A program made the position numbers and the translations under genes. The notes beneath the pieces were generated by a model, which had not been told where the DNA came from, did not search any database, and saw only the letters and a program-made list of their open reading frames with translations. A stretch of DNA of 63,500 nt, the filler included, from Chiloscyllium plagiosum (lineage: Eukaryota), in NCBI RefSeq assembly GCF_004010195.1. It is 7 parts of 7 records of this genome, joined end to end, with 100 filler letters (N's around TTAATTAATTAA, not from the genome) between each part and the next. Parts side by side here need not be neighbours in the genome. Positions count along the whole stretch, not along the records: positions 18,930 to 43,730 come from NC_057711.1; 6 more parts are not named here. The stretch is one strand, 5' to 3'. Numbering within the stretch: the first letter of the stretch is position 1; each line of letters opens with the position of its first letter. This document shows positions 18,091 through 40,400 of the stretch, piece after piece.

Positions 18091-19299
18091 CTGATTATTG
18101 CTATCATCTGGACATCGAGTTATCGCTATGAAAACTACTGTCAAATTATTACACAGGACTTCCTGTCAATAAAACCGTGTTAAAAATTGTTGATTTATCT
18201 TCCAAATGAAGACTAATTTCACTTCTCAATAGTTTCCTTACCACTGAGACTAGCTTGACAGATCTGTGTTTTCATTATTTATCCCTTCCTTCGTCCTGCA
18301 TAACAGTGCAACGTTGGCTGATCTACACCCACTTGGCACAACTGCTGTGGCCAGACAGGAATTCTAAATTATTGTCAGCGACCCAACTATTTCATCCTTT
18401 GCATCGCTCAACCGCTTGGTATACTTTTCATCTGCCCTGGAAATATAACCACTTTTCATTCAGCAAGACAACACAGAACATCACGTCATATGTCCTAATT
18501 TCTGAAAGTACATCACAATACCACTCCATGATTTCTGTCCCCACATTGTCCCTCTTCCTAGTGAACACTGACACAACACATTCGTTTTGACCACAACCAA
18601 ATCCTCCGGCTCCACTCCAATAATAACACTTAATGGGCATTACTGTTTCCCGAATAATTATTTTATTATGAATGAGCCTGTAACTTTTAAAATATTTTCC
18701 TTTGTTTTGACTGCTATTATTTTCTCATGGTCCCTTTTGCTCTTCTAATTCCTTTGTCTTTCAAACTCCCCCTTGCACGTTCTGTACTCCATATCAGTTT
18801 CTATTGTTTTGAGATTTCAGTATAGACCGNNNNNNNNNNNNNNNNNNNNNNNNNNNNNNNNNNNNNNNNNNNNTTAATTAATTAANNNNNNNNNNNNNNN
18901 NNNNNNNNNNNNNNNNNNNNNNNNNNNNNGGGGGGGGGTTGGGAGACACAACACGTGTAGTGTCTCGGGTTCAGCCACTGCCTAGATATACTACCGGCAG
19001 TCCCCTGGTCGTCGCTCCCGCTTTTCCTACTTATTAACTAGGTTAGAGGAGGGCAGGTGGGAGACACTACAGTAGTAGAGTCTCGGTTTAGCCACCTTGC
19101 TGATATATATGGTCACTGCTTTCCTTCCTGACTGCCCCTCGAGGAGGGCAGGTGGGAGACACTACAGTAGTAGAGTCTCGGTTTAGCCACCTTGCTGATA
19201 TATATGGTCACTGCTTTCCTTCCTGACTGCCCCTCCGGTCCACGTCATTTCCTCCGCTGCTCTCGCTCCTTCTCCGCTGCTGCTCGCACTTAAATAGTT

Positions 19300-20340
19300 T
19301 GATTTGAATTGATTTATTGTTGTCACATGTACTTACGTGCAGTGAAAAGTTTTGTTTTGCGAGTAGTACAGGCAGATCATAGCAAACAAGGACCTATAGA
19401 TCATAGAGTGCTTAGGCAGAGCGAGGCATGCTAGGTTATGGCTGCACAGAAGGTGCATAAAGCAAGATCAACGTTAGATTTGAAATTAGAGAGATCCATC
19501 AGCAGTCTAATAACAGAGGGGAAGAAGTTGGTGGTGCATGTACCTTCTACTTGATGGAAGAGGTTGGAAGAGGGTGTTACTGGGATGAGAGGGGTTTTGA
19601 TGATGTTGGCAGCCTTTCCCTGGCATCGAGAAGTGTAGATGGAGTCCGTGGATGGGAGGTTGGCTTCCAACTTGGTCTGGGCTGTGCACACAACCTTCGA
19701 TTGTGTCATATGGTCCTGGGCAGAGCAGTTGCTGTACCAGGCTGTTATGCACTTGGACAGTATGCTTTCAATGGTGCATCTGTAGGAGTTGGTGAGGGTC
19801 CTTATGGACATGCCAAATTTCCTGAGCTTCCTGAGGAAGAGGAGGCATTCTTGTGCCTTTCTGACTGTCGCATCTATATGGGAGGACCAGGACAGATTGT
19901 TGGTATCATCACTTCTCGGAACTTGACGTTCTTGACTCTCTGCACCTCAGCTCCATTGATGTAGATCGGGGTGCATCCTCCTCCTTTCTTCCTGAACTCA
20001 ATGATTAGTTCTTTGGTTTTGCTGACATTGAGAGAGAGGTTGTTTTCATTGCACCATAACACCAGGCACTCTATCCCCTTCCTCTATTCTGACTCGTCAT
20101 TGTTTGATATCAGTTCTATAATGGTGGTGCCATCAGCAAACTTGTAGATGGTGTTAATTGGGAGTTTGGCAACACAGTCATGGGTATACAGGGAGTAGAG
20201 TAGGGGGCTGAGGACACCTCATTGAGGGGCTCCAGAGTTATTGTGGAGGAGGTGCTGTTGTCTATCTTCACTGATTGCGGTCTGTGGGTCAGGAAGCTGA
20301 GGATCCAGTTGTAGAGGATGGAGCTGAAACCTAGGTTTTG
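19300..20340 (-). mobile_element. Rex1/Babar-like LINE RT C-terminal fragment
   Basis: Peptides WILSFLTHRPQSVKI, WCNENNLSLNVSKTKELIIEFRK and LTNSYRCTIESILSKCITAWYSNCS. Confidence 0.75.
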
Positions 20341-22165
20341 CAAATGAGAATGGAAAAGAAATCCCATTCTGTCTCATAGCTCCTTTCAGTTCCACAGCAG
20401 CAGGGAGACAATTTTCAAATTTGCCAAAGTAGAGTCATTTTCGATTGAAGACATTAACTCTGACTCTGCCTCTCCATCAGACCTGCTGAGTTTCACCAAC
20501 AATTTCTATTCTTATTTTAGATTTCCAGCTTCTGCATTATTTTATTTCTAAGTTTGCATACACCCTGGTTCAACCTTAGAAGGTGGGGTGGTCATGTGCA
20601 GCACAGAAATAAAGTAATGGCCTTAGTCTCCTTGCAGGGAGTATAGCACATAACTAGAGAATCAACCATGATCATATTGAAGGGTGGAACAGCTCTAGTC
20701 GTCCAGTTATAGGAAGGATTTTCTTAAGCTAGAGAGGGTTCAGAAGAGATTTACCAGGATGTTGCTGGATATGGAGGGGGTCTGAGTTCTAAAGAAAGAC
20801 TGGATAGGCTGGGCTTTTCACTGGACTGCAGGAGGTCAAAGGGCAACCCAACAGAGGTTTATAAAATCATAAGATGTATAGATAGACTTAATAGTAGGTG
20901 TCTTTTCCCTAGGATGGGGAATTTCAAGACTAGGGTCCATATTTTTAAGTTAAAAGGAGTAAGATTTAAAAAAAAGATATGAGGGGCATTTTTTTTTACA
21001 CAGAATGCTTCGTGTGTGAAATGAACTTCCTGAGGAAGTGGTAGATGCAGGTACAGTTACAATGTTAAAAAGACATTTGGATAAGTTGATGAATTAGAAA
21101 TATTTGGAGGTATATGGGCCAAGCGCAGGCAGTGAGACTAGTTTAGTTTGGGATGATGATCAGCATGGATTGGATGGACCAAAGGGTCGTTTCCATGCTG
21201 TCTGACTCTATGACTCTGTAACAGGTTTGAAGGGTCGAAATGTTTCTTCTTGTGGTTTCTATGTTTCTGACATTTATCCGGCAGATATCACCACCTATCC
21301 AAAGCTGACGGGCAGACAATCTGTTGATTGTGCCAGGGTACAGAGGCAGAGATGCAGTGTTGCCAAGTGCCTACATGTGAAAGCTGACTCCCCAAGTCAG
21401 TAGTGTTGGTGGCCAATGAACAACTGGTAAATAAAAGGTGGTTGGGGCCAAGAGGGTTTTCATGGGGGACCCCAGAAATAATGGTGTGGATCTGGAAAAG
21501 AAACCACTGTTGGAGATGCCAACATCACAAGCAGAATCGCTGAACCATGCATGGAAGCTGGAAACCAGTGGGAAATGTCGGAGACAGATAGATTCAACAC
21601 AGCAGCAGAGGTCTGGAATATATATCAGGAAACACCTGGATAACTTGAAGAGAAGGAAATACAGAGAAATTCCAATACAAACGAAAACAATTTGCAGGAT
21701 AGAGCACGATTTCCTAACATTCTCTGCAGTCAGTGATGGACTTTGGAAGTTTCGTCACAATTGAAAGGAAGGAAACACTGCAATCATTTTCAGCACAGCA
21801 AGATCCCACAACCACAGGACTATTTTATTTTCATGACACTAGCTGAGAGATAAATTTTAGTCAGGATCCCAGGGTGATTTTCATCGAAATAGTGAATTTG
21901 TGGCCTTTCACTCCCACCAAAGAAGTCAGGTAGGACCCCATCTTAACATCCCACCCACCAGCAAGATGGTGCCTCTCAATGGTGCAGAACTCCCTCAGGA
22001 CCACTCATCGACCACAGAACGAAAAAGTAAAAGCAGGGAAAAGGGGTAGACAAACTTCTACCCTGGATGGCTGATTGTGAGTCATATTCAGTATAAGATC
22101 CCGGTATGATGAGGCAGGGGAATAAGAAAGGGTTATGGGTGTCTCTCATTCCATTTGACGGTCAA

Positions 22166-22170
22166 TTAAT
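22166..22170 (-). CDS. Candidate terminal coding exon (Asp-stop) of the Siglec-15-like gene
   Basis: A strong acceptor tttctctttcttcccacag ends at 22171. Joined to the phase-1 TM exon it gives G|AT TAA. Unverified, and other tail exons are possible. Confidence 0.35.
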
Positions 22171-22304
22171 CTGTGGGAAGAAAGAGAAATGCAATGTTCA
22201 AGTGTTGTTCATCCATTAGCCATTCAGTATTTTAAATTTGCTGTATATGAATGATCTGAGAAGCAGGAAAATGGACATTTCAGGCAAAAGCCCTTCATCA
22301 GGTC

Positions 22305-22340
22305 ATTTCTGATGAAGGGCTTTTGCCCGAAACGTCAATT
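22305..22340 (+). ncRNA. Minimal hammerhead ribozyme motif in a Penelope-derived palindrome (family A)
   Basis: CTGATGA (22309-22315)-A-GGGC-TTTT-GCCC-GAAA-C-GTC with a short stem I. An inverted partner copy lies immediately upstream (about 22262-22302). Confidence 0.65.
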
Positions 22341-23694
22341 TTCCTGCTCCTCGGATGCTGCCTGACGTGCTGTGCTTTTCCAGCACCACACCCTCGACTC
22401 TAATCTCCACCATCTGCAGTCCTCACTTTCACCATGTATGAGGGATAGCCAGAGCATCAGATAAGATTGGAATAAAACTATGAATCATAAGGCCAGAGAT
22501 CCAACCTTAAAGTTGAGAAACATGCTTAAGTGTTTTGAAGGACATTGAAATCTGTAGAGATTTTATCTGAGAAACACTGTTCATGCACATAGTCTACTGG
22601 GTGTGATGGAAGACCCCATTTGTCCAGATGAGTGCAGCTCCAGTAACATTCACTTGGGGAAGTGCTGGTGATGTTACTGGAAAAGGAAGCAGTCCAGGAG
22701 AATGTACTGGGAACATGGGTTCAAATCCTATCAGGGCAGCCACTGGAATATTAATTCTCATTATGGTTGTCACTGATTTCCTGTAAAAGTCCATCTGGTT
22801 CGTTAACATCTCTTTTACGGGATGGTCTGTCATTTTTGCCTAGTTTTGTCCATTTGTGACTGGTTGACATTAAATTTCATGGGTTGGACTTGAACCCATG
22901 CACTAACCTAGGACCTCAATGACATTACCACTGCGCCATCATCTGCTGGGATGTAGGTACTACTGATGAGGTGATGGTGGTGAGTCACCGTTTGAATCAC
23001 TGCAATATCCCTCCCATCCTCCTGGTGCAACAAATAGTCTTTAGTTTGGGGAGAGCCAGTGAAATTGTGCTATCATCACTGGGCCAGAAATCTAGAGATT
23101 CCAGATAGTATCCTGGGTACCTGGGTTCGAATTCCACCAGGGCAGATGGGTTAGAGTTAATTAAAACTACTAACTAGAAGTGCAATGATGGTCGTGAAAT
23201 CATTGCTAATTGGCAGGAAAAACCCATCTGGGTCCCTAATGTCTCTTCAGGAAGGAAATCTGCCATCCTTACCTGGTCTGGCCTACATGTGACTCCAGAC
23301 CCATAGCTATGTGGTTAATTCTGATCTGCCCTCTACAATGGATACGTGAGCCATTCAGTTGTATCAACCATGATAAAGGATCAAAGGAATGAAAACGAAT
23401 GGACTCACTGCATTGGCTAAGGTGCCAGTACCAACAATGGCAAAACAGCAATATATTATTGTTCCTTCGGTGTTGCTGGGTCAAAATCCTGGAATTCCAT
23501 CCCTAAGGGTATTGTGGGTCAACCCACCGCACGTGGAGTGCAGCGGTTCAAGAAGGCAACTCACCACCACCTTCTCAAGGGGCAACAAGGGAAAGGCAAT
23601 AACGACTTTTTCTATTCTTTCAGAGAGCAGCTAGCAGTAGCCATGTAGGCCAGACAGGGTAACGATAGAGGATTAGGAGAAAGTAAGCACTCTG

Positions 23695-23892
23695 TCAGAG
23701 TTGAGACTGTGGTGCTGGAAAAACACAGCAGGTCAGGCAGCATCTGAGGAGCAGGAGAATCAATGTTTTGGGCATAAGCCCTTCATCAGGAAAGGACTTC
23801 CTGATGAAGGGCTTATGCCCGAAACATTGATTCTCCTGCTCCTTGGATGCTACCTGATCTGCCGTGTTTTACCAGCACCACACTGTCAACAA
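23695..23892. mobile_element. Head-to-head palindromic Penelope-derived element (family A)
   Basis: Arms of about 95 nt centred near 23795: ...GGGCATAAGCCCTTCATCAGGAA-AGGAC-TTCCTGATGAAGGGCTTATGCCCGAAAC.... Similar palindromes lie at about 22255-22435, 50350-50550 and 58845-59075. Confidence 0.8.
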
Positions 23893-26078
23893 TGACAGAG
23901 GATTCCCTTTCCCAAACATCATGATTTGATCTGTTTTTACAACAATCCAATAGCTTCACAGTCAGTGATAAGATATGTATCGTATTCCAGACTTATCACA
24001 CCTGAAATGTCACAGCTGCTGTAGTGGGATGTTGACCTCAGAATGGTCCAGGTTACTAGGCTCAGTAACAGAACTATTATTCCACAATTTCTTTATCAGG
24101 CTTGGCTAAAGTAGGTTTATATTTTTATTATCTGTAAAGAGTGTAATTGAGTTAATATTTTCAGCTCTTCTCCCAGAGGGTTGTGAATCTGTGGAATTCC
24201 TTACTGCAGAGGCTAGGTCCATAAGACCATATGACATAGGAGCAGAAATTAGGCCATTCAGCCCATTGAGACTGTTCTGCCATTCCATCATGGCTCATAG
24301 GTTTTTCAACCCCATTCTCCCACTTTCTCCCCGTAACCTTTGATCCCCTTTGCAATCAAAAACTTCTCAATCTATGTTTTAAATATGCTCAATGATCGGC
24401 CTCCACGACCTTCTGTGGTAATGAATTCCAAAGATTCACCACTCTCTGGCTAAAGAAGTGTCTCCCTGGGATATCTGGTCAGCATGGACGGGTTGGACCG
24501 AAGGGTCTGCTTTCATGCTGTACATCTCTATTACTCTATAATCGCCATTCCAAAGGGTCTTTCCTTTACTCTAAGCTATGCCCTAGTCTCTCCTACCAAT
24601 GGAAACGTCTTCCTAACATCCACTCTGTCCAGGTCGTTCAGTATTCTGTTTGTTTCAATTAGATCCCCCCCCATCCTTCTAAACTCCATTGAGTATAGTC
24701 CTAGAGTCCTCAAACATTCCTCACATGTTCAGCCTTTTATACCTAGGATCATTCTCATGAACTCCTCTGGACCCACTCCTCTCTCTGAGGTGTGAGGCTG
24801 AAACATTGCTCACAATACTCTAAATGTGGTCTGACCAGAGTCTTATGGAGCCTCAGAAGTAGATCATGCTTTTATATTCTAGTGCTCTCGAGATGAATGA
24901 CAACATTGTAATTGCCTTCCTAACTACTGACTCAACCTGCAAGTTTACCTTAAGAGAAACCTGGAGTAGGACTCCCAAGTCTCTTTGCACTTCAGATTTC
25001 TGAATTTTCTCCCCATTTAGAAAAATGGTCCATGCCTCTATTTTGCCTACCAAAGTGTATGGCATCACACTTTCCCACATTGTATTCCATCTGCCACTCC
25101 TTTTCCCACTTTTGTNNNNNNNNNNNNNNNNNNNNNNNNNNNNNNNNNNNNNNNNNNNNNNNNNNNNNNNNNNNNNNNNNNNNNNNNNNNNNNNNNNNNN
25201 NNNNNNNNNNNNNNNNNNNNNNNNNNNNNNNNNNNNNNNNNNNNNNNNNNNNNNNNNNNNNNNNNNNNNNNNNNNNNNNNNNNNNNNNNNNNNNNNNNNN
25301 NNNNNNNNNNNNNNNNNNNNNNNNNNNNNNNNNNNNNNNNNNNNNNNNNNNNNNNNNNNNNNNNNNNNNNNNNNNNNNNNNNNNNNNNNNNNNNNNNNNN
25401 NNNNNNNNNNNNNNNNNNNNNNNNNNNNNNNNNNNNNNNNNNNNNNNNNNNNNNNNNNAAGATATAAAAGAGACCTAAGGGGCAACGTTTTCACACAGAG
25501 GGTGGTACATGTATGGAATGAGCTGCCAGAGGAAGTGATGGAGGCTGGTACAATTACAACATTTAAAAGGCATCAGGATGGGTATATGAATAGGAAGGGT
25601 TTGGAGGGTCATGGGCCGGGTGCTGGCAGGTGGGACTAGATTGGTTGGCATGGACAAGTTGGACCGGAGGGTCTGTTTCGGTGCTGTATGTCTCTATGAC
25701 TCTATATTCAGAGCAGAGGCAGACAGATCTTTAATCACTCAGGGAATCAAGGGTTATAGGGATAAGGAAAGGGAAGTTGAGGATGATCAGATCAGCCACA
25801 ATTTCATTGAATGACAGAGCATGTGATGGTTGAACGGCCGACCTCTTTTCCTACATCTTGTGGTCTTATGGGGCCCAACATGAGTCAAAATGTTAACTGT
25901 TTCTCTCTCTGCCAGACCTGCTGAGTTTCTCCAGCAATTCTGTTTTTATTTCAGATCTCCAGAGTTGGCAGCTTTTTGCTTATCTAATTATTTTCGGTCA
26001 CATTTAGGAGGTAGCTATCTCACTTTCTTTCTCATTCCTGCTTTAAATCACCAAACAGATAAAGACAAGTGAACGAAC

Positions 26079-26462
26079 CTTTTATCTTCATGAAGAGAAT
26101 GATCCCCGTCACCAGAAGGAGGAGAAATTTGATTAAAGGAATCAGGCACAGCATTCCCACGATGAAATTGGAGTAGTTGTCACCAGTGGAGGGGTAGTCA
26201 ATCTGACGAGTGTCCCTCCCATGTTCGTTTTCAGCCACACAGCTGTACGTCCCTCTTAGTGCCGGGTTACGGAACTTTCCCAGGGTCTGATGTCTCCCTG
26301 GCACTCGGCTGACTATTGTGTCCCTGCTGTCCCCAGGCACGAGGCTGCCTTCAGGGTCTACCCATGTGATGTTGGCAAGTGGCTCTCCTTCCACCTGGCA
26401 CACGATGGTGTTTCCAATTCCGTTCTCTCTCACAGATGACAGCTTCAGGATTGTGGCTGGAG
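26079..26462 (-). CDS. Siglec-15-like receptor: C2-set Ig plus transmembrane exon (TM Lys)
   Basis: 384-nt phase 1-1 exon: APATILKLSSV...IVCQVEGEPLANITW...GRHQTLG...GTYSCVAENEHGR...FIVGMLCLIPLIKFLLLLVTGIILFMKIK. It parallels the recalled Siglec-15 motifs APRIVNISV / CTAEGEPPPALAW / GRYTCTAANSLGR / GFKALLLL. Confidence 0.88.
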
Positions 26463-26509
26463 CTACGCAAGGGAAAAAGAGAGAGAAACACATGTAAGTT
26501 TATCTCATT

Positions 26510-27425
26510 TATCCATGATATTTGGGTGCCACAGGCTGGGCCACATTTACTGGTCTGTCCCTATTTGCCCCTTGAGAAGGTGGTGGTGAGCTGCCTTCTT
26601 GAACCGCTGCCATCCATTTACAACAGATTGCGCACAATGCCCTGAGGGAGGGAATTCCAGGATTTCGACCCAGCGACACTCTAGGAATGGTGATATATTT
26701 CCAAATCAGGTTGGTGAGCGGCTTGGAGGGGATGGTGTTCCCATGTATCTGCTGCCCTTGTCCTTCCAGATGATGAAGGTCGTAAGTGTGGAAGTTTCTT
26801 TTCTAAGGTGCCTTGCTGAATTTCTGCAGTGTAACTTGTAGATAATGCACACTGCTGTTTCTGTGCGTCAGTAGTGGAGGGAGTGGGTGTGGTGTCAATC
26901 AAGTGAACTGCACAGTTCTGGATGGTGTTAATCTTCTTGAGTATTGTTGGAGCTGCCCCCATCCAGGCAAGTGGGGAGTATTCCAACACACTCCTGACTT
27001 GTACCCTGTAGATAATGGACAGGCTTTGGGGAGTCAGGAGGTGAGTTATTCACTGCAGTATTCCCAGCTTCTGATCTGCTCTTGTAGCCACTGTAGTGGT
27101 TAATCCAGTTGTGGCCAAAGTTAAGCCCCAGGATGATGTTAGTGTGGGATTCAGTGACAGTAATACCATTGAATGGCAAGGGGTGATATTAGATGTTGAC
27201 AGTCTGGCACCTGCGTGGTGTGAATGTTTCTTGCCTCTTGACAGCCTAAGCCTGGATATTGAGCAGATCTGATTGCATTTGGGCATAGACTGCTTCAGTA
27301 TCTGAGGAGTTGCAAATGGTGTTGAACATTACACAATCATCGGCGAACATCCCCCCACTTCTGACCTTATGATGGAGGGAAGGCCATTGATGAAGCAGCT
27401 GAAGATGGTTGGGCCTGGGACACAC
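26510..27425 (-). mobile_element. LINE 3' fragment (CR1/L2 group) with conserved 3' tail
   Basis: Peptide MLEYSPLAWMGAAPTILKKINTIQNCAVHLI. The tail GCAGCGGTTCAAGAAGGCAGCTCACCACCACCTTCTCAAGGG recurs at about 23540, 34180 and 42800. Confidence 0.7.
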
Positions 27426-27576
27426 AGTGGGAGGCTACTCCAGCAAATGGATTGTAATGTTTCAACAAGGCAGCTCCTACCACCTTCTCAATATGTGGGC
27501 AAATGGAGCTAATCAACAAGCTAATGGTGAATGGTGGAGGTAATTGAAAATGATGTTATTACAGATGTTTCCTTAC

Positions 27577-27945
27577 CGAATGCCTGGAGTCTCAACACAT
27601 CCTGAGTCACATTTTCCTGATTCTCAATCCTGATGTGGACACGACAGAAATAATCACTGGAATCGTTCAGCCGCAGGTCTCTTATCCTGATGGAGGCGTC
27701 TCCTTGGGTTAGGTCTCCAATCAGTTCATATTGCTGTCCTTCATTTACAGTGACCGAGTCAGTGTAATGAGAACTAGCATTGAGGGAACGAGTCTGATTC
27801 AAGACAGTGGACTCCTCATGTGGATTGTCCTTCATCCAGAGGACAGTGACGGACTGGGACAGCCACTCGGGGGGGTTAAAGGCACAGGGCAGCGTAGCAG
27901 AACCTCCCTTCTTCCCAGTCACTGGCACCGAATCATTTTTCACAG
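27577..27945 (-). CDS. Siglec-15-like receptor: second V-set Ig exon (retains YFCRV arginine)
   Basis: 369-nt phase 1-1 exon (ctcag acceptor, G/GTAAG donor): AVKNDSVPVTGKKGGSATLPCAFNPP...VLWMK...YELIGDLTQGDASIRIRDLRLNDSSDYFCRVHI...LRLQAF. Confidence 0.9.
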
Positions 27946-28254
27946 CTGAGACAGAGAAGGATTTCACAGAATGTCACATGGAGCAGGAAGACGATTTGCA
28001 ATGTGCTTGTGTTTGTGGAATATTCATGAAAACAGAAAGTGAGCGCATCTTCACAAAAATTAAAGAAAAGCCTGCAGGTGCTTTTGCTGCAACTTCCACA
28101 TTCCACAAGTCGGCCAAAAATATTGTGATTCCAACAAAGTATCTGTTGCAATGGGGGAAACCGGAGCCGATTGCTGCGCAGCAGCCTCTGCAAGCAATGT
28201 CGTGATGCCCCAGTAATCTGGGGACATGTGTTGGTCAGGACACTTGAGAAATTG

Positions 28255-28580
28255 GGGCAGCACATGGGTCAGTGGTTAGCACTGCTGCCCCACAGCACTA
28301 AGGACCCAGGCTTGATTCCAGCCTTGGGTGACTCTTTGTGTGGACTTTCCATTTTCTCCCTGTGTCTTTTGGGTTTCCTCTCACAGGTCAAAGATGTGCA
28401 GGTTAGGGTGGGTTGGCCATGCTAAATTGCCCATAGTGTATGGGGATGTGCAGGCTAGGTGGGTTAGCTGTGGGAAATGCAGGGTTGCAGGGATAAGGTT
28501 GGTCTGGGTGGAATGCTCTTCAGAGTGTTGGTGTGGACTTGATGGGCTGAATGGCCTGCTTCCGTACTGTAGAGATTCTA
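28255..28580 (+). mobile_element. tRNA-derived shark SINE (HE1-like)
   Basis: The 5' end has tRNA-like A/B boxes (GGTCAGTGGTTAGCACTG...GCTTGATTCC) and the 3' end is a CR1-like tail. Other copies lie at about 9200-9458(-), 29418-29740(-), 52145-52435(-), 52846-53185(-), 54880-55205(+) and 55487-55815(+). Confidence 0.85.
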
Positions 28581-29965
28581 TAAGTTATAATTGCTTCTTC
28601 TCATATCATCTCCATGAGAACTTTTTCACCCTGTTTACTGAGCGGATGTGAGCTCAGTCATATTCGTACAGGAAAGATGGCTGTTCCAACAGTGCAGCAC
28701 TCCTTCAGAACAACACTGGGCGGGTCAACCTGGGCTATGGTCACAGTTGCTGGAATCCAACTTGAACCCACAAGTTTTGAACTCAGAGAGGGGAGGGTGC
28801 TAAGCTCCAGCTGACATCGACAAGGTGCAGAGGAGGTTTAATTGGATGGTGTTTTTTAAAATTTGGGAAGAGCTTGGTGGTTTGGAGTTACAACACGATG
28901 AGGCCATTCTGCCCTTTGAATCTGCTCCAGCACTGTTTGGATAGCCAGCTTTCCCGTGCGCACATAACTGAGCTCATGTCTGCTCAGTATGGTGCAGAAT
29001 TCTCACCTTCCCATACTATTCTCAGAGTTTTTGTTTCCCTTAAAGCACAAAGATCCAAATATATTTTGGACTTGAATCATACAATCTCTGAACATCCGCA
29101 GCTCTCTGAGTCAGAGAATCCTGACAATTCCTCATCCTCCAAGTGAAGACATTTCTCCTCACCTCAGTCTGTGGATCCAATCCATCATGCTAGGACTGCG
29201 ACTCCTCGTTCTGAACAGTCCAGTCAGAATGTCTGCAACAGCTTCTTTATTAACCCCTCAGGCAAAGCGTCACTAAAGTTTATACTTTGCAAGGTGATCA
29301 CCTCTCATTCTTCAAAATGGTATTGGCTCATTCTATTCAATCCTACAAATCTCAATGTTCAAGTGAGAGAGTCTTCAGTTACACATTCTATCTACACAGG
29401 ATTACCAAGTTGAATGAATCATAGAATCTCTAGAGTGTGGAAGCAGGCCATTCGGCCCATCAAGTGACTCACCGACCCTTCGAAGAGCGTCCCACCCAGG
29501 CAAACCCTATCACTGTAACCTTGCCATTCCCATGGTTAACCCACCAAGCCTGCACATACCTGGACACTACAGGCAATTTTCCATGGCAAAGCCACCTAAC
29601 CTGCACACCTTTGGACTGTGGGAGGAAACCGGAGCACCCATAGGAAACCCACGCAGACACCGGAGAGTGTGCAAACTCCACACAGACAGTCGCCTGAGGG
29701 TGGGGTCGAACCCTCATCCCTGGCACTGCCACTGTGCCACTTCAAAAGCATGTTTCAAGACAGGCCAGCTCTCAAACTGGGGTTCAGGAGTTCGATTTAC
29801 TCCTGAAAAAGAAGATGTTATAGGACTATGGAGTGAGGGGAAAGGGAATGGGAGGGTTGGGTAGCTAGCATGAATGTGAAGGGGTGAATGGCCCCCATCC
29901 GTATTGCATGACTCTCCGACCCAATCATTGACAATTTGATTCAAAAACATTGAACAAAGTCTTAC

Positions 29966-30364
29966 CTGGTATCACAATAATTGTTTGACCTGAGCTCTGT
30001 GATGTTTCATTGGGATAGTGACTCAGATTCACAAGGCAAAGATACTGCTGATAGTTATCATGTAGAGACAGCTGTTTGATGATTATGGAAGCATCATTCT
30101 CCCTTGGATTTCCCAGTGCTTGGTAACGCTCATTAATATTCTGGTGGATCATATTCTCAAACACCACGCTCTGCGAGTTCAGCGTTGGATAGTTTGTGTA
30201 ACTGTAAAGCACCAGATTAGTCCACATCTTCTTCCATGTAACAGTAATGTTTCCTTGATATCCTGGGTGAGGATGAGTGAACTTACAGATCAGAAGAGTG
30301 ATCTTCCCTTCCCTACCTGTCACCCTGTCCGGTGTCTCCATTGTCCAGCCATTCTGACTGAAAC
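29966..30364 (-). CDS. Siglec-15-like receptor: first V-set Ig exon (essential Arg replaced by Leu)
   Basis: 399-nt phase 1-1 exon: GFSQNGWTMETPDRVTGREGKITLLICKFTHPHPGYQGNITVTWK...ERYQALGNPRENDASIIIKQLSLHDNYQQYLCLVNL.... It parallels the recalled Siglec-15 WSMQVP..V....G....LPCTFTHPH..YDG..T..W and RFRLLGNPRRNDLS. The signal-peptide exon was not located. Confidence 0.9.
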
Positions 30365-30439
30365 CTGTGGAGAATGACAATATATCACAACAGATGGTAG
30401 TGCAGAACTGGAGTACTGCTGAGAAAAGACACATTTTAC

Positions 30440-32200
30440 TGAGTTATACAGTACGGAAACAAACCCTTTGGTCCAACCAGTCCGTGCCGAACATAATCCT
30501 AAATTAAACTAGACCCACTAAACGTTTCTTATTCATATACTTATCCAAAATTCTTTTAAATGTTGTAATTGTACCCACATTCACCACTTTCTTTGGCAGT
30601 TCATGCCACACATGAACCACACTCTGTGTTAAAAAATTGTCCCTCGTGTCTTTTTAATAACTTTCTCCTCTCACCTTAAAAATATGCCCCCTTGCCTTGA
30701 AAGAGCTCACTTTAGGTGAAAGACACCTGCCAGTCACCTTATCTGTACCCCTTATGGTTTTATAAACCTCTATAAGGTCACCCCTCAACCTCCTCCACTC
30801 CAGTCAAAAACATGTCTAGACAATCCAGCCTGTCCTAATACTCAAACCCTCCATTCCCGGCAATATCCTGGTAAATCTCTTCTGAACCCTCTCCAGTTTA
30901 ATAATATCCTTCCGAGAACAGAGAGACTAGAACTGGACATAATACTCCAGAAGAGGCCTCACCAAAGTCCTGTACAACTTCAAGATGATGTCCCAACTCC
31001 AACACTTAAAGGTCTGAGCAATGAAGGCTAGCATGCTAAACCAATCTGTCCACATGTGATGCAAACTTAAAAGAATTATGTACCTGAAACCCTAGGTCTC
31101 TCTGTTCTACCACACCACCCAAGGACCTATTTTTAATTGTATAAGTCCTGTCCTTGTTTGTTTTACCAAAATGCAATAACTCACATTTAGCAAAATTAAA
31201 CTCCATCTGCCACTCACCAGCCCTTTGACCCAATTGATCAAAATCTCTTTGTAATCTCAGATAGCCTTCTTCACTATCCACTATACCACTAATTTTGGTA
31301 ACATCTGCAAACTTACTAACAATGCCATCTATATTCTCATTAAAATTGTTCATATAAATGTCAAATAAAAGTGGACCCAGTACCAATCCCTGTGGAACAC
31401 CACTGGTAACAAACCTCCAGTCTGAAAATCAACCCTCCACCATCACCCTCTATCTCCGACCATTAAGCCAATTTTGTATCCAACTGGCAAGCTCACTCTG
31501 AATCCCATGTGATGTACCTTTAGTAAATAGTCTACTATGCAGAACCTTGTCAAAGGATTTATTAAAGTCCAAGAAAACAATTTCTGTCACGCCACCTTCA
31601 TCAATCTTCTTGGTTAATTCCTCAAAAAACTCAATCACATTTGTAAGACGTGATTTTCCTCACACAAAACCACACTGACTATCCCTAATCATTCCTTCCC
31701 TCTTCAAATGCATATAAATGCTAGAATTTAGAATCTCTTCCAACAACTTAGCCACCACCAAAGTCAGACTCGCAGGTCTAAAGTTCCCAGGCTTCTCCTT
31801 ACATCACCTCTTAAATAAAGGCACAACATTAGCCACTCTCCAGTCATTCAGCACCTCACTCGTATTTATGGATGATATAAATATTTCTGCAAGGGGCCCA
31901 GCAATTTCCTCCCTAACACCCCACAACGTCCTGTGGTATATTAGATCAGGTCCTGGAGAGTTATCCACCTTTATATTTTCTAAGACCTCCAGCACTTCCT
32001 TTTCTGTGATGTGCATTGTTTTCAAAGCAGCAATATTTATTTCCATGAGTTCTCTATCCTCCATTTCTTTCTTCACAGTAAAACTGACGTGGAATGTTCA
32101 TTTAATGTCTGTTCTATACCCTGAGGTTCAACACAAAAATGACCTCTTTGATCTTTAAGGGGCCCTACTTGTCTCTCTAGCTGCTCTCTTGCTCTCAATG
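30440..32200 (-). mobile_element. CR1 LINE, ~1.75-kb 5'-truncated copy
   Basis: IKVDNSPGPDLIY...WRVANVVPLFK, VFLDFNKSFDKVLH, VLGPLLFDIYMNN...SKFADVTKI and the 3' tail occur in collinear order. Confidence 0.92.
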
Positions 32201-32344: not shown

Positions 32345-33330
32345 CAATGGATGTAGGTATGCTCGCTGAGCTGGAAGGTTCATTATTAGACGTCACCACA
32401 CTAGGTACCATCTTCAGTGGGCCTCTGGACGAAGCACTGCTGGTATTTCCTGCATTCTATTTATATGTTTGGGTTTCCTTGGGTTGGTGATGTCATTTCC
32501 TGGGGTGATGCCATTTTCCTATGGTGATAACATTTCCTGTTCTTTTTCTCAGGGGGTGGTAAATGGGGTCCAAGTGAATGTGTTTGTTGATAGAGTTTTG
32601 GTTGGAATGCCATGCTTCTAGGCATTCTTGTGCATGTCTTGGTTTGGTTTGTTCTAGGATGGATGTGTTGTGCAAGTTGAAGTGGTGTCCTTCCTTATCT
32701 GTATGTGAGTATACTAGTGAGAGAGGGTCATGTCATTTTGTGGCTAGTTGATGTTCATGTATCCTGGTGGCTAGTTTTCTGCCTGTTTGTCCAATGTAGT
32801 GTTTGTTACAGTTCTTGCACAGTATTTTGTAAATGACATTAATTTTGCTTGTTGTCTGTATGGGGTTTTTCAAGTTCATTTGCTGCTGTTTTAGTGTGCT
32901 GGTGGGTTTGTGGGCTACCATGATGCCAAGGGGTCTGAGTAGTCGGGCAGTCACTTCCGAGATGTCTTTGATGTAGGGGTGAGTCCTAGGACAAGCCAAA
33001 CAGAGGTACGCATGAGAATTCCTAGAAGCATGACATTCCAACCGGAACTCTATCAACAAACACTTGGACCCCATTTACCACGCCGTAAGAAAAAGAGCAG
33101 GAAATGACATCACCATAGGAAATGACATAACTGCATGAAATGACATCACCAGCCCAAGGAAACTCAAACCTATAAATTGAAAGCAGGAAACACCAGCAGT
33201 ACTTCGTCTGAAGGCCCACTGAAGATGTTACCTAGAATGGTGGCGAAACATCTGAAAATGAACCTTCCAGCTCAGCGAGTAAACCTACATCCAGGACCTC
33301 AACCTGAGCTACAAATCTTCTCAAAACTTA
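32345..33330. mobile_element. Penelope-like element remnant: GIY-YIG fragment with inverted pseudo-LTR copies
   Basis: Minus-strand peptide PYIKDISEVTARLLR...NVIYKILCKNCNKHYIGQTGRKLATRIHEH is a GIY-YIG motif. Regions of about 32345-32660 and 32985-33300 are inverted copies of each other. Confidence 0.88.
33217..33254 (+). ncRNA. Hammerhead ribozyme-like motif in Penelope pseudo-LTR (family C)
   Basis: CA-CTGAAGA-T-GTTACC-TAGAAT-GGTGGC-GAAA-C-ATC-TG has both core boxes and a 6-bp stem II. Stem III appears altered. Confidence 0.55.
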
Positions 33331-37402: not shown

Positions 37403-40400
37403 GAGGAAAGTGTGTCCAGCAGGCTAAGATAAAAGGTAGGGAGGAGGGACTTGGGGGAGGGGCATTGGAAATGCGATAGGTGGAAAGAGGTCGAAGGTGA
37501 GGGTGATAGGTCAGAGTGGGGTGGGGGCGGAGAGGTCAGGAAGACCTGCTTATCTTAGCCTGCTGGACACACTTTCCTCATTCCTGAAGAAGGGCTCATG
37601 CCCAAAACNNNNNNNNNNNNNNNNNNNNNNNNNNNNNNNNNNNNNNNNNNNNNNNNNNNNNNNNNNNNNNNNNNNNNNNNNNNNNNNNNNNNNNNNNNNN
37701 NNNNNNNNNNNNNNNNNNNNNNNNNNNNNNNNNNNNNNNNNNNNNNNNNNNNNNNNNNNNNNNNNNNNNNNNNNNNNNNNNNNNNNNNNNNNNNNNNNNN
37801 NNNNNNNNNNNNNNNNNNNNNNNNNNNNNNNNNNNNNNNNNNNNNNNNNNNNNNNNNNNNNNNNNNNNNNNNNNNNNNNNNNNNNNNNNNNNNNNNNNNN
37901 NNNNNNNNNNNNNNNNNNNNNNNNNNNNNNNNNNNNNNNNNNNNNNNNNNNNNNNNNNNNNNNNNNNNNNNNNNNNNNNNNNNNNNNNNNNNNNNNNNNN
38001 NNNNNNNNNNNNNNNNNNNNNNNNNNNNNNNNNNNNNNNNNNNNNNNNNNNNNNNNNNNNNNNNNNNNNNNNNNNNNNNNNNNNNNNNNNNNNNNNNNNN
38101 NNNNNNNNNNNNNNNNNNNNNNNNNNNNNNNNNNNNNNNNNNNNNNNNNNNNNNNNNNNNNNNNNNNNNNNNNNNNNNTGAGAAAGACAAAGAAAGAAAT
38201 GTAGGATTAAAAGAAAGGGAAATAATGAGACAAGGATAAAGATAAATAATTAAATAGGACAAGAGGAAGAAGGGCTGACATAGAAAGAGAGAGACAGTTG
38301 GTGAGACAGGGAAAGAGAGAGAAAATGAGAGAGGGAAAATGAACAGGAAGGAGGAGAAGGAGACTGAGGGAGAGCCTGAGTGAGAGAGAAAATTGAAATC
38401 AAGAGCATTGGAGGGATATGGGCCGGGTGCTGGCAGGTGGGACTAGATTGGGTTGGGATATCTGGTCGGCATGGACAGGTTGGACCGAAGGGTCTGTTTC
38501 CATGCTGCACATCTCTGTGACTCTATGACTCTAAATCAGATTTGATGAACTTCTTGAAGTGTTTTGAGGAAGGAACAGACCATGTGAAGAAATGGGAACC
38601 TGTCGGTGTGATGTAGCTGTATTTCCAGGGGTTTAAGTTTAATGTCAAAGCTGGTTCCAGGTGGCACAAAAAGGAGAAAGGCAACTCACATCAGTCTCTA
38701 GCAACAGGAAGTAGCTGCCTGTCTAATGTTGGCAGTGCCCGGATGTAAAATGAGGAAGCCCACAAAACAGAATAAAATGACCTGATTTTATTTTCTCCTG
38801 TCAGCCACATGTCCTGCAGCCTCCCAACTCTTCCTCAGCCTTCCTATCATTCCTGAGCAGAAAGGAGGCTGCTTTCCATCTTCCTCCCTATCTTTGCATC
38901 ATCTGTCCATTTAGCTGGCACACCTTTGATCCCCTCATCTTTGTCACTGATATCAGTTGTAAAAGGTTGAGTGCCCAGTACAAATCCCTGTGGGACCCTG
39001 TCCATCACAACCTGCCAATCTGAAAAAAAAACAACCATCTATGCACGCTGTCTGTATCCTGCCAGCCAGCCAATCTTCTACCCTTGTTGGTATGTTACCC
39101 TTACACCATGGGTTTCTAGAACAACAAAGAACAAACCACAACACAGCACAGGAACAGCCCTCCAGGCCTGCACCAACACATTTTATCCTTCCATTCTAAA
39201 ACTGTCTTCCCTTCCAGGATCCGTATCCCTCTATTCCCTCTCTATTCATGTATTCCTCCAGGTGCTTCTTGAATGCAGCTATTGTGTCTGCTTCCACCAC
39301 CTCCTGTGGCAGCATGTTCCAGACACTCACTTTCACCCTTTGTGTGACAAACTTGCCTCACACATCTCTTTTAAATTTCCCCCTGTCACACTTTGAACCT
39401 GTATCCCCTAGTAACTGACCTTCCACCCTGGGAAAAAGCCTCATACTTGCCAATCTATCTATGCCATTCACAATGATACAAACTTCTATCAGGTCACTCC
39501 TCAACCTCCTGTGTTTCAATGAAAATATACCCAGTCTAGCCAACCTTTCTTCATAGCTAAAATCCCTCATACCAGGCAATATCCAGGCAAGCCTTTTCTG
39601 TATCCTCTCCAAAGCATCCACATCCTTCTAGTAGTGTGGCCTAACTAAAGTTCTATAAAGCTGCAGCAAAACTTGCCTATACCTATCCTGGATGCACTCC
39701 TACATTCAACAATAATCTTTTCTATGAAACTATATCAAGTGCTTTCTAAATCAACAGTAAAGTACAAACTCAATGGGCCAAAGGGTCTCTACTGTTTGAT
39801 TCTATAACAGATTCCCTTTCAACTACAGAGCACATTATTCCTTCAAAGAATTCCAATCTAAACTATAATTCCTGAAGAGAAAAGTCTTTTTTTTAACAGG
39901 CCTGAATTTTTTTACAGTTTATAAAAATGAGCGAATCTCTTTAATTGGTTAATTTCTTGAGTATATATGTGCAATATGTGATTGACATCGCAGTTAGACT
40001 TTCACAGTGAACTTGCGAATATATAGTCTCTTTGTTTAAACTCATGAAACCTTGCTGCTGTGATTAAATTGAGCACACACTCACATCTTATTTCTCCCAA
40101 AACACACTGACTATGGACAGAGAGGGGAAGATTACAAGTGTTTTGGTTCTCTTCTGACACTCTCCCATTTTAGGGTAGCATGTTAGCAATAGAGAGAGAG
40201 TCTTGGTTGGCAGTCAGGAAACAGAGAGGAGGCAGAAATACAAACAGAAATTTCTGGGAAAACTCAGCAGATCTGGCAGCATGTGTGGAGAGAAAGCAGT
40301 GCTAACATTTCGAACACAGTGACCTTTCTTCAGAATGGCAGAAATGAATGATTTTCAATTGACAAGGTGTAGTGAGTGATGCGCTACAGGAACCAGGGCG

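What the first reader, a model, noticed from the sequence alone, without database searches (positions are those of the whole stretch)
26079..30364. Siglec-15-like receptor with two V domains (V-V-C2-TM with Lys), essential Arg only in V2
Seen: three phase 1-1 exons (399, 369 and 384 nt) splice into one open frame with no stops. Known: Siglec-15 is V-C2-TM, binds sialic acid through the F-strand Arg of YFCRV, and couples to DAP12 through a TM Lys. Here V1 has the strongest Siglec-15 signature (W-x-M, CKFTHPH, LGNPRxND) but reads YLCLV. Its codon CTT at 30033-30035 is one base away from CGT. The more divergent V2 keeps YFCRV (CGT at 27641-27643), and the TM keeps the Lys (26128-26130). Neither V has the extra Cys pair of mammalian Siglec-15. 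Inference: a cartilaginous-fish activating receptor derived by V-exon duplication. It may have a non-sialic ligand site on V1 or a recessed sialic-acid site on V2. The two-V layout recalls mammalian Siglec-12. I do not know of a characterised receptor of this form, but I cannot check annotations.
Basis: partly seen in the sequence, partly recalled or inferred. Interest (0 to 1): 0.85.

Follow-up and report, generated by a model that had tools for sequence, protein, structure and literature searches.

The report
Shark two-V Siglec-15-like activating receptor
This is a real gene of the whitespotted bamboo shark that public annotation already predicts: an immune receptor related to Siglec-15 with two outer domains and a charged membrane anchor, and its sugar-binding arginine in the second domain is a species-level quirk, not a conserved feature.

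Summary
Three phase-1 exons on the minus strand (399, 369 and 384 nt, all AG/GT) encode V1, V2 and C2+TM.

The three translations match, in order and without a mismatch, RefSeq XP_043560161.1 of Chiloscyllium plagiosum, auto-named "CXADR-like membrane protein isoform X1". So the gene model is already annotated.

V-V-C2-TM(Lys) orthologues with almost no tail exist in sharks, rays and a chimaera. A separate one-V "Siglec-15" that keeps the Arg also exists in sharks.

V1 is Siglec-15-like (PDB best hit 7zoz, E 3e-12). In the orthologues its F-strand residue is Leu in 10 of 12. In 10 of 11 elasmobranchs the G-strand contact motif is replaced by an N-glycan sequon.

The V2 position is His in 9 of 13 orthologues, including the congener C. 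punctatum. Arg occurs only here and in the whale shark. V2 has no other Siglec pocket residue.

The TM is 88% identical between sharks and rays, against about 52% for the Ig domains.

Best reading: an adaptor-coupled activating receptor that has lost canonical sialic-acid binding. No RNA or structure test could be run. First-stage notes of this scan flag related clusters elsewhere in this genome.

The parts
29966..30364 (-). V1 exon (399 nt, phase 1-1): the Siglec-15-like V-set domain. The F-strand Leu (CTT, 30033-30035) stands where Siglec-15 has Arg143. Sequons N-L-S and N-E-T sit in the F-G segment.
   Evidence: Sequence read; sites and codon. Pfam V-set 1.8e-6. PDB best hit Siglec-15 7zoz, E 3.1e-12. 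Exact match to residues 26-157 of XP_043560161.1.
27577..27945 (-). V2 exon (369 nt, phase 1-1): the second V-set domain. Arg (CGT, 27641-27643, in a CpG context) is on the F strand. It carries five N-glycan sequons.
   Evidence: Pfam V-set 4.2e-16. PDB hits are generic V-set: CD276, JAML, Siglec-15 at 3e-6, TIM. It is 30% identical to V1, E 1e-9. Exact match to residues 159-280 of XP_043560161.1.
26079..26462 (-). C2/I-set domain, short stalk and transmembrane segment with a central Lys (AAA, 26128-26130). The exon ends K-I-K plus the first base of the last codon.
   Evidence: Pfam I-set 5e-6 and Ig_3 4e-6. Exact match to residues 282-408. The Lys is present in 14 of 14 orthologue rows.
21824..22170 (-). 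Inferred last exon. After a strong acceptor (17 of 19 pyrimidines, then CAG) the exon opens with AT, completing GAT = Asp, followed by TAA (22168-22166). AATAAA lies at 21829-21824. This gives the C-terminus ...K-I-K-D of the RefSeq protein.
   Evidence: It was the only match to the acceptor + AT + stop pattern in 18930-26076 on the minus strand. Sequence read. Inferred, with no transcript evidence.
27946..29965 (-). Intron between V1 and V2 (2020 nt).
26463..27576 (-). Intron between V2 and C2+TM (1114 nt).

Best explanation
The window holds exons 2 to 4, and probably the short last exon, of a functional Chiloscyllium plagiosum gene. It encodes a type I membrane receptor: leader, V1, V2, C2, a transmembrane helix with a central Lys, and a four-residue tail (K-I-K-D).

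It belongs to a chondrichthyan-wide subfamily of the Siglec-15 lineage. This subfamily stands beside a separate one-V, Arg-bearing, tail-bearing 'Siglec-15' gene.

Mechanism (inferred): with no signalling tail, the receptor signals by pairing its buried Lys with the acidic residue of an ITAM adaptor of the DAP12/DAP10 type. Human Siglec-15 does this.

The canonical sialic-acid pocket of V1 has been dismantled. The F-strand Arg is replaced by Leu, and the G-strand contact motif by an N-glycosylation sequon. V2 never had such a pocket; its Arg is a recent change at a normally His position. The receptor therefore most likely recognises something other than sialic acid in the classical way.

It is the activating arm of a family whose Lys-less members, some with tyrosine-motif tails, mostly keep the Arg.

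Shown here: the gene structure, identity with the RefSeq model, family membership and the conservation patterns. Inferred: adaptor coupling, loss of lectin activity and the paired-receptor role.
For: - The exons match XP_043560161.1 exactly.
- Orthologues of about 400 aa with the same layout occur in 6 shark, 5 ray and 1 chimaera species.
- TM plus tail is 0.88 identical between sharks and rays (30 pairs), against 0.52, 0.51 and 0.53 for V1, V2 and C2. The Lys is present in 14 of 14 rows.
- The TM resembles the (P/A)-L-G-x-K-x-L-x-L-L motif seen in 7 of 12 osteichthyan Siglec-15 rows.
- Passages of PMC7226832 state that the Siglec-15 TM Lys mediates DAP10/12 association and that R143A abolishes binding. 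Passages of PMC10264397 list R143, W44, Y87, V150, R153, Y154 and E155 as contacts.
- V1 F-strand position: Leu in 10 of 12 orthologues. It is Arg in 11 of 11 chondrichthyan one-V genes and 13 of 13 osteichthyan Siglec-15.
- An N-x-T sequon replaces the G-strand motif in 10 of 11 elasmobranch orthologues. The sequon is found at that offset in 0 of 5 Lys-less siblings, 0 of 11 one-V genes and 0 of 13 osteichthyan rows.
- Lys-less siblings keep Arg in 3 of 5 and a K-F-E/Q motif in 4 of 5.
- In a second shark V-V family, all 5 rows without TM Lys in the 9-row set keep Arg. The 4 Lys-bearing rows have Ser, Ser, His or a gap.
- V1 is still constrained, with 17 invariant positions across 17 rows.
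Against: - The only hint is that three runs guessed to be RNA hold 0.24-0.25 of the sampled words, close to the exon share of 1152 of 4451 bases.
- No adaptor gene was looked for in sharks. An older survey found no FcR gamma chain in shark data and did not address DAP12 (passages of PMC4016189).
- Loss of lectin activity is inferred from sequence only. V1 keeps the A-strand Trp and the invariant Arg of G-N-P-R, and Mustelus has Arg again at the F-strand position.
- No Lys-less partner from an orectolobiform shark appeared among 39 hits of a capped search. A paired-receptor role in this species is therefore unproven.
Confidence: 0.7

Rival explanations
1. One reading: V2 has taken over sialic-acid binding through its F-strand Arg, while V1 serves another ligand. 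This would make a lectin with a recessed site.
For: The Arg aligns with the V1 Leu position, and that position aligns with R143 of human Siglec-15. The whale shark orthologue also has Arg. V2 is under constraint, with 9 invariant positions across 26 rows.
Against: The position is His in 9 of 13 orthologues, including the congener C. punctatum, and His in 5 of 5 Lys-less siblings. It is Leu in 7 of 7 V2 domains of the related D family. V2 has no A-strand Trp. It carries E-N-V-T-Q-D with a sequon where the G-strand contacts should be. The codon is CGT in a CpG context, so Arg/His flips are cheap (inference). In the tree V2 lies outside the Siglec-15 V clade.
Confidence: 0.07
2. It is the true orthologue of bony-vertebrate Siglec-15 that gained a second V domain. 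It still binds sialylated ligands through V1 in a non-canonical way.
For: In the V tree the V1 clade of the two-V families groups with osteichthyan Siglec-15, excluding the chondrichthyan one-V genes (93/89). Only the two-V gene carries the central TM Lys motif of Siglec-15. The one-V genes have Lys/Arg only at the outer TM edge (9 of 12 rows) or none (3 of 12). The A-strand Trp and the G-N-P-R Arg are kept.
Against: The AU test does not reject one-V genes + osteichthyan Siglec-15 as a clade (p 0.20). The C2 tree leaves the backbone unresolved. The one-V shark protein matches human Siglec-15 over its whole length (E 3.8e-30), has the same V-C2-TM-tail layout and keeps Arg in 11 of 11 rows. R143A abolishes binding in human Siglec-15 (passages).
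Confidence: 0.15
3. It is a decaying or non-functional copy, or an annotation artefact in which exons of two genes are wrongly joined.
For: Arg-less primate Siglecs such as human Siglec-XII are described as being eliminated (passages of PMC6288428). No transcript evidence was obtained here. The leader of RefSeq isoform X2 has no hydrophobic stretch.
Against: All three exons are open with intact AG/GT sites. The same exon order is modelled in 12 species spanning sharks, rays and a chimaera. The TM is 88% conserved between sharks and rays. V1 is no less conserved than V2 or C2. Only three Ig exons lie in the 24.8-kb piece, in one orientation and in matching phase.
Confidence: 0.05
4. It is an adhesion molecule of the CXADR/CLMP or B7-H3 (CD276) type, as some automatic names suggest.
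For: RefSeq names for this species and the whale shark are 'CXADR-like membrane protein'. Two ray relatives are named CD276-like. V2 hits CD276 and CXADR among solved structures at 3e-8 to 8e-5.
Against: V1's best solved match is Siglec-15, about eight orders of magnitude ahead of any non-Siglec hit. The protein has a charged TM and a four-residue tail. From my own recall, not from a call, this differs from the long-tailed, uncharged CXADR/CLMP. Most orthologues are auto-named Siglec-15.
Confidence: 0.03

Closest known systems
RefSeq model XP_043560161.1, 'CXADR-like membrane protein isoform X1' of Chiloscyllium plagiosum, and its orthologues (for example XP_072447821.1 'Siglec-12' of C. punctatum)
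   Same: Residues 26-408 are identical to the window's three exon translations plus the two junction codons. The layout is the same in sharks, rays and a chimaera.
   Different: Nothing differs; it is the same gene. The names are automatic and inconsistent: Siglec-15, Siglec-12, CXADR-like, CD276-like and 'uncharacterized'.
Vertebrate Siglec-15 (human Q6ZMC9, PDB 7zoz)
   Same: The V1 motifs match, and Siglec-15 is the best solved hit (E 3.1e-12). Both have the canonical B-F disulfide, a C2 domain, and a central TM Lys followed by a Leu-rich stretch.
   Different: The shark gene has a second V domain and Leu instead of R143. It lacks the C95-C104 pair and the R/K-Y-E G-strand motif. It has an extra sequon, and a four-residue tail instead of the roughly 40-50-aa tails with a Y-E-N motif seen in the mammal, bird and lungfish rows.
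Chondrichthyan one-V 'Siglec-15' (for example XP_041041398.1 of Carcharodon; scyTo_0015103 of Scyliorhinus torazame)
   Same: It belongs to the same wider V clade and has the same C2 type. In S. torazame its locus tag is consecutive with the two-V gene's, and both rows list a longest contig of the same length, 141,275 bp. In several species the longest-contig lengths also agree, which is consistent with one chromosome.
   Different: It has one V and keeps Arg in 11 of 11 rows. It has no central TM Lys and a longer tail with Tyr motifs.
Primate Siglec-12/XII and the paired Siglecs 5/14 and 11/16
   Same: Siglec-12 has two V-set domains, and human Siglec-XII has lost the essential Arg. [quoted passage not shown] Here too, forms with and without Lys in one species share nearly identical V2 and C2.
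   Different: Siglec-12 is a CD33-related receptor that recruits SHP-2. Here the Arg-less two-V form is the Lys-bearing one, and V1 rather than V2-C2 is the diverged part.
Lungfish 'Siglec-15 isoform X2' (XP_043934105.1)
   Same: The layout is V-V-C2-TM(Lys).
   Different: Both of its V domains keep Arg and are each other's sisters in the tree (96/81). That points to an independent, recent V duplication.

Membership tests
[quoted passage not shown] | N-terminal V-set domain with the essential F-strand Arg that forms a salt bridge with the sialic-acid carboxylate | tested here: not met
   V1 has Leu (CTT, 30033-30035) aligned to R143. The position is Leu in 10 of 12 orthologues.
[quoted passage not shown] | Supporting contacts: A-strand Trp and G-strand aromatic/acid residues (W44, R153-Y154-E155 in human Siglec-15) | tested here: inconclusive
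   The Trp is kept in V1. The G-strand motif is replaced by N-E-T-S-Q-S. V2 has neither feature.
[quoted passage not shown] | Measured sialic-acid-dependent binding | not testable with these tools
   Needs recombinant protein and glycan arrays.
Siglec-15 lineage (homology) | V domain closest to Siglec-15 among known V-sets | tested here: met
   PDB best hit 7zoz at E 3.1e-12, against CD33 at 1.7e-4. V1 lies in the clade with Siglec-15 V domains.
Siglec-15 orthologue (one-to-one) | V-C2-TM layout with one V domain and a cytoplasmic tail | tested here: not met
   It has two V domains and the tail K-I-K-D. A separate one-V gene exists in sharks.
Siglec-15 orthologue (one-to-one) | Phylogenetic position as the sole chondrichthyan counterpart | tested here: inconclusive
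   The ML tree favours two-V V1 + osteichthyan Siglec-15 (93/89). The AU test does not reject the alternative (p 0.20). The C2 tree is unresolved.
Siglec-15 orthologue (one-to-one) | Extra C95-C104 disulfide in the V domain | tested here: not met
   Each V has only two Cys. The pair is described in PMC10264397.
DAP12/DAP10-coupled activating immunoreceptors | Basic residue in the core of the TM helix and a short tail without signalling motifs | tested here: met
   Lys at 26128-26130 is the 13th residue of a run of about 25 hydrophobic residues, and the tail has four residues. The Lys is present in 14 of 14 orthologue rows.
DAP12/DAP10-coupled activating immunoreceptors | Physical association with an ITAM adaptor, and presence of that adaptor in the species | not tested
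Passages of PMC4016189 do not address DAP12 in sharks.
Paired activating/inhibitory receptor family | A closely related partner with similar ectodomain, an uncharged TM and a longer tail in the same species | tested here: inconclusive
   Such partners exist in Heptranchias, Pristis and Callorhinchus, with nearly identical V2 and C2. None from an orectolobiform shark appeared among 39 hits of a capped search.

The most novel reading that the evidence does not exclude
In cartilaginous fishes the two halves of Siglec-15 function were separated before chimaeras and elasmobranchs split, and the halves lie in neighbouring genes. A one-V gene kept the sialic-acid Arg and a tyrosine-bearing tail but lost the central TM Lys. 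The two-V gene in this window kept the ultra-conserved Lys-bearing TM, presumably for an ITAM adaptor. In elasmobranchs its sialic-acid pocket was then closed (Arg to Leu, plus a glycan sequon on the G strand). The same Arg loss in Lys-bearing members recurs in a second shark V-V family. That would make loss of self-sialic-acid recognition a repeated rule for activating members of this lineage. It would imply an unknown, non-sialic or pathogen-derived ligand.
Probability: 0.3. Interest if true: 0.6.

Novelty: new variant of a known kind. Interest (0 to 1): 0.4.

Why it matters
Siglec-15 is under study as an osteoclast regulator and a cancer immunotherapy target, and the papers I read call it conserved from fish to mammals. 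The chondrichthyan data show that the oldest living jawed-vertebrate lineage does not have a simple Siglec-15. It has a one-V, Arg-bearing gene without the central Lys, and a two-V, Lys-bearing gene whose sialic-acid pocket is dismantled.

If confirmed at the bench, this would give a natural case of an adaptor-coupled Siglec-15 relative that works without sialic-acid recognition. It would also be a very old example of activating members of a paired receptor family shedding the self-ligand site.

For annotation, it shows that the names given to this gene (CXADR-like, Siglec-12, CD276-like) are misleading.

Tried and rejected
- **Alternative V1 acceptor.** The upstream in-frame peptide loosely resembles the orthologues' leader.
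- **Leader exon.** I searched the piece for it by tblastn and by fuzzy peptide matching. It was not found, so it lies beyond the piece or in an N run.
- **Further Ig exons.** None lie in the piece beyond the three. Two weak V1-like fragments near 40.1-40.3 kb (E 0.075 and 1.3) are taken as chance.
- **First V1 alignment.** A 35-row V1 alignment (A1) aligned the one-V proteins poorly (15-23% identity). I replaced it with a 17-row one (A3).
- **Rows dropped from the V tree.** I dropped domain hits covering fewer than 85 profile positions, such as the partial V1 of P0104. I also dropped third and later domains of the outgroup-like proteins. P0105 and P0027, whose V1 is truncated, were not included.
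- **C2 tree.** It did not resolve orthology.
- **Paper searches.** Six searches for Siglec/Siglec-15 with shark, cartilaginous fish, elephant shark, Chiloscyllium, Callorhinchus, Chondrichthyes or elasmobranch found no description of this receptor. The library lacks most subscription journals. The whale-shark paper mentions Siglecs once and points to its Supplementary file 9, which I could not see.

Full report
**What is in the sequence.** On the minus strand there are three open exons with canonical AG acceptors and GT donors.
- V1: 30364..29966, 399 nt.
- V2: 27945..27577, 369 nt.
- C2 plus transmembrane segment: 26462..26079, 384 nt.

All three are in phase 1-1 (read, recomputed). Pfam scores V1 and V2 as V-set and the third exon as I-set/Ig_3. 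A motif scan of all six frames found no other Ig exon in the piece. The introns are 2020 and 1114 nt.

**Identity of the gene.** I searched the model exon by exon and left the joined step out. The V1 exon alone was run against 1.84 billion representative proteins. It gave 88 hits at E up to 1e-3, 25 at up to 1e-10 and 8 at up to 1e-30, many with two or more V-like stretches.
- A search with the ray orthologue P0006 returned 25 proteins of cartilaginous fishes. Most are auto-named Siglec-15.
- Cluster look-up of the C. punctatum hit gave two C. plagiosum members.
- One of them, XP_043560161.1 ('CXADR-like membrane protein isoform X1', 409 aa), contains the three exon translations without a mismatch. 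They sit at residues 26-157, 159-280 and 282-408. Ala and Ala stand at the two junctions, as phase-1 splicing predicts, and a final Asp follows.

Isoform X2 differs only in the leader and joins at the same acceptor.

The leader exons are not in the piece. One site fits the last exon: a pyrimidine-rich acceptor, then AT-TAA starting at 22170, with AATAAA at 21829-21824. This is an inference.

**No direct transcript test.** Run discovery listed three runs, guessed to be RNA, that hold 0.24-0.25 of the sampled words. That is close to the exon share of the query (1152 of 4451 bases).

**The family.** Proteins of about 400 aa with the layout leader-V1-V2-C2-TM(Lys)-short tail come from these species:
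- Sharks: Chiloscyllium punctatum, Rhincodon, Cetorhinus, Heterodontus, Mustelus.
- Partial shark models: Heptranchias and Scyliorhinus torazame.
- Rays: Mobula, Hypanus, Pristis, Leucoraja, Rhinoraja.
- Chimaera: Callorhinchus.

Some species also have siblings with the same ectodomain, an uncharged TM and a longer tail. These are Heptranchias, Pristis, Hemitrygon, Callorhinchus, and a Narcine form without C2.

Separately, sharks, rays and the chimaera have a one-V 'Siglec-15' of about 320 aa. The Carcharodon protein matches human Siglec-15 over its whole length (E 3.8e-30). In S. torazame the one-V and two-V genes carry consecutive locus tags, and both rows list a longest contig of 141,275 bp. 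An unchecked first-stage note of this scan places a Lys-less Siglec-15-like gene about 35 kb from this window.

**Which domain is Siglec-15-like.** V1's best solved relative is human Siglec-15 (E 3.1e-12). The W-x-M, C-x-F-T-H-P-H and G-N-P-R-x-N-D motifs align, and Leu stands opposite R143. CD33 follows at 1.7e-4. V2 gives only generic V-set hits: CD276, JAML, Siglec-15 at 3e-6, and TIM. V1 and V2 are 30% identical.

**Trees.** The V-domain tree has 94 domains and 115 columns.
- The V2 domains of the Lys-bearing genes, their Lys-less siblings and a second shark V-V family form one starred clade (98/90).
- V1 of the first two groups forms another starred clade (97/88).
- The V1 clades group with osteichthyan Siglec-15 (93/89), excluding the chondrichthyan one-V genes (100/99).
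- The AU test does not reject one-V genes plus osteichthyan Siglec-15 as a clade (p 0.20).
- It also does not reject V1 plus V2 as one clade (p 0.27).
- The C2 tree unites forms with and without Lys (100/94) but leaves the backbone open.

The V-V arrangement therefore arose once, before chimaeras and elasmobranchs split. Its origin by duplication of V1, and the one-to-one orthology with Siglec-15, remain open.

**The arginine question.** At the column of R143:

| Group | Residue at the R143 column |
|---|---|
| Lys-bearing genes, V1 | Leu 10 of 12; Arg 2 (Callorhinchus, Mustelus) |
| Lys-bearing genes, V2 | His 9 of 13; Arg 2 (this species, Rhincodon); Tyr 1; Cys 1 |
| Lys-less siblings, V1 | Arg 3 of 5; Cys 1; Gln 1 |
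| Lys-less siblings, V2 | His 5 of 5 |
| Chondrichthyan one-V genes | Arg 11 of 11 |
| Osteichthyan Siglec-15 | Arg 13 of 13 |
| Second V-V family, V1 | Arg 5 of 9 (all 5 rows without TM Lys); the 4 Lys-bearing rows have Ser, Ser, His, gap |
| Second V-V family, V2 | Leu 7 of 7 |

C. punctatum, whose V2 is 95% identical to this one, has His. The Arg codon here is CGT in a CpG context, so Arg/His exchange is a single easy transition (inference).

Passages of PMC10264397 list the human contacts as R143, W44, Y87, V150, R153, Y154 and E155.
- Osteichthyan Siglec-15 rows mostly keep an aromatic-acid motif on the G strand, and 4 of 5 Lys-less siblings and the chimaera's Lys-bearing gene keep K-F-E/Q.
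- In 10 of 11 elasmobranch Lys-bearing genes an N-x-T sequon stands there instead.
- V2 has neither the A-strand Trp nor that motif.

V1 is nevertheless as conserved as V2 and C2 and has 17 invariant positions in 17 rows. It is therefore not decaying.

**The membrane anchor.** Between sharks and rays (30 pairs), TM plus tail is 0.88 identical. V1, V2 and C2 are 0.52, 0.51 and 0.53.
- The Lys is present in 14 of 14 rows of the Lys-bearing group.
- The motif P-L-I/V-K-F-L-L-L-L resembles the L-G-x-K-x-L-x-L-L seen in 7 of 12 osteichthyan Siglec-15 rows.
- The chondrichthyan one-V genes have Lys or Arg only at the outer edge of the helix (9 of 12 rows) or none (3 of 12). They carry tails with Tyr motifs.
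- Passages of PMC7226832 state that the TM Lys of Siglec-15 mediates DAP10/DAP12 association, and that the Lys and R143 are conserved from fish to mammals. That paper does not mention sharks.

**Reading.** The best-supported explanation is a functional, adaptor-coupled activating receptor of the Siglec-15 lineage that no longer binds sialic acid in the canonical way.

The analogies to Siglec-12/XII (two V-sets, Arg loss) and to the paired Siglecs 5/14 and 11/16 come from passages of PMC6288428. Forms with and without Lys in the same species share nearly identical V2 and C2 but differ in V1 and TM. That would fit gene conversion or shared exons.

A capped search returned no Lys-less partner from an orectolobiform shark among 39 hits. 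The three orectolobiform rows are the Lys-bearing gene itself. This is not proof of absence.

**Novelty.** The gene model is already annotated, under misleading names. I found no paper describing it (searches; the library lacks most subscription journals, and supplements were closed). I rate it a new variant of a known kind, of moderate interest.

Noticed in passing
window 30281-30286 (minus strand), inside the V1 exon: The codons for the B-strand C-K-F spell GTAAGT, a perfect donor consensus, with the exon ending in phase 1 at 30287. The whale-shark RefSeq isoform X2 (P0027) has exactly the junction this would give: ...L-I-S, then the start of V2. That removes most of V1 in frame. A V1-less isoform is therefore conceivable. 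Neither C. plagiosum isoform uses the site.
   Followed up: partly
window 30365-30443 (minus strand): The reading frame of V1 stays open for 26 codons upstream of the acceptor. It holds an ATG at 30434 and a second phase-1 AG at 30420-30419, and the peptide loosely resembles the orthologues' leader. Both RefSeq isoforms splice at 30364, so this is probably not used.
   Followed up: partly
window 31039-31386 (-), 32736-33074 (-), 19434-19946 (-): Retroelement debris lies around the gene. There is a reverse-transcriptase fragment (RVT_1, 1.4e-5, below Pfam's cut-off), a GIY-YIG fragment (3e-4, below cut-off) and a PF09004 match (9.8e-9).
   Followed up: partly
proteins P0003/P0104 (Heptranchias), P0100/P0091 (Pristis), P0115/P0111 (Callorhinchus): Within a species, the Lys-bearing and Lys-less forms have nearly identical V2 and C2 domains, but they differ in V1 and in the TM and tail. 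This could be gene conversion or alternative use of shared exons.
   Followed up: partly
proteins P0019, P0041, P0045, P0046 against P0119, P0020, P0023, P0024, P0025: A second chondrichthyan V-V-TM family, without C2, shows the same split. All 5 rows without TM Lys keep the V1 Arg. The 4 members with a TM Lys have Ser, Ser, His or a gap. Their TM resembles this gene's.
   Followed up: partly
protein P0109 (C. plagiosum isoform X2): Its eight-residue alternative leader has no hydrophobic stretch. This isoform would lack a signal peptide and may be non-productive or a model artefact.
   Followed up: no
window 40083-40163 (+) and 40199-40267 (-): There are two weak matches with stops to parts of V1 (tblastn E 0.075 and 1.3). 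They are probably chance.
   Followed up: no
protein P0009 (Protopterus annectens): A lungfish 'Siglec-15 isoform X2' also has V-V-C2-TM(Lys). Both of its V domains keep Arg and are sisters in the tree, so this is an independent duplication.
   Followed up: partly
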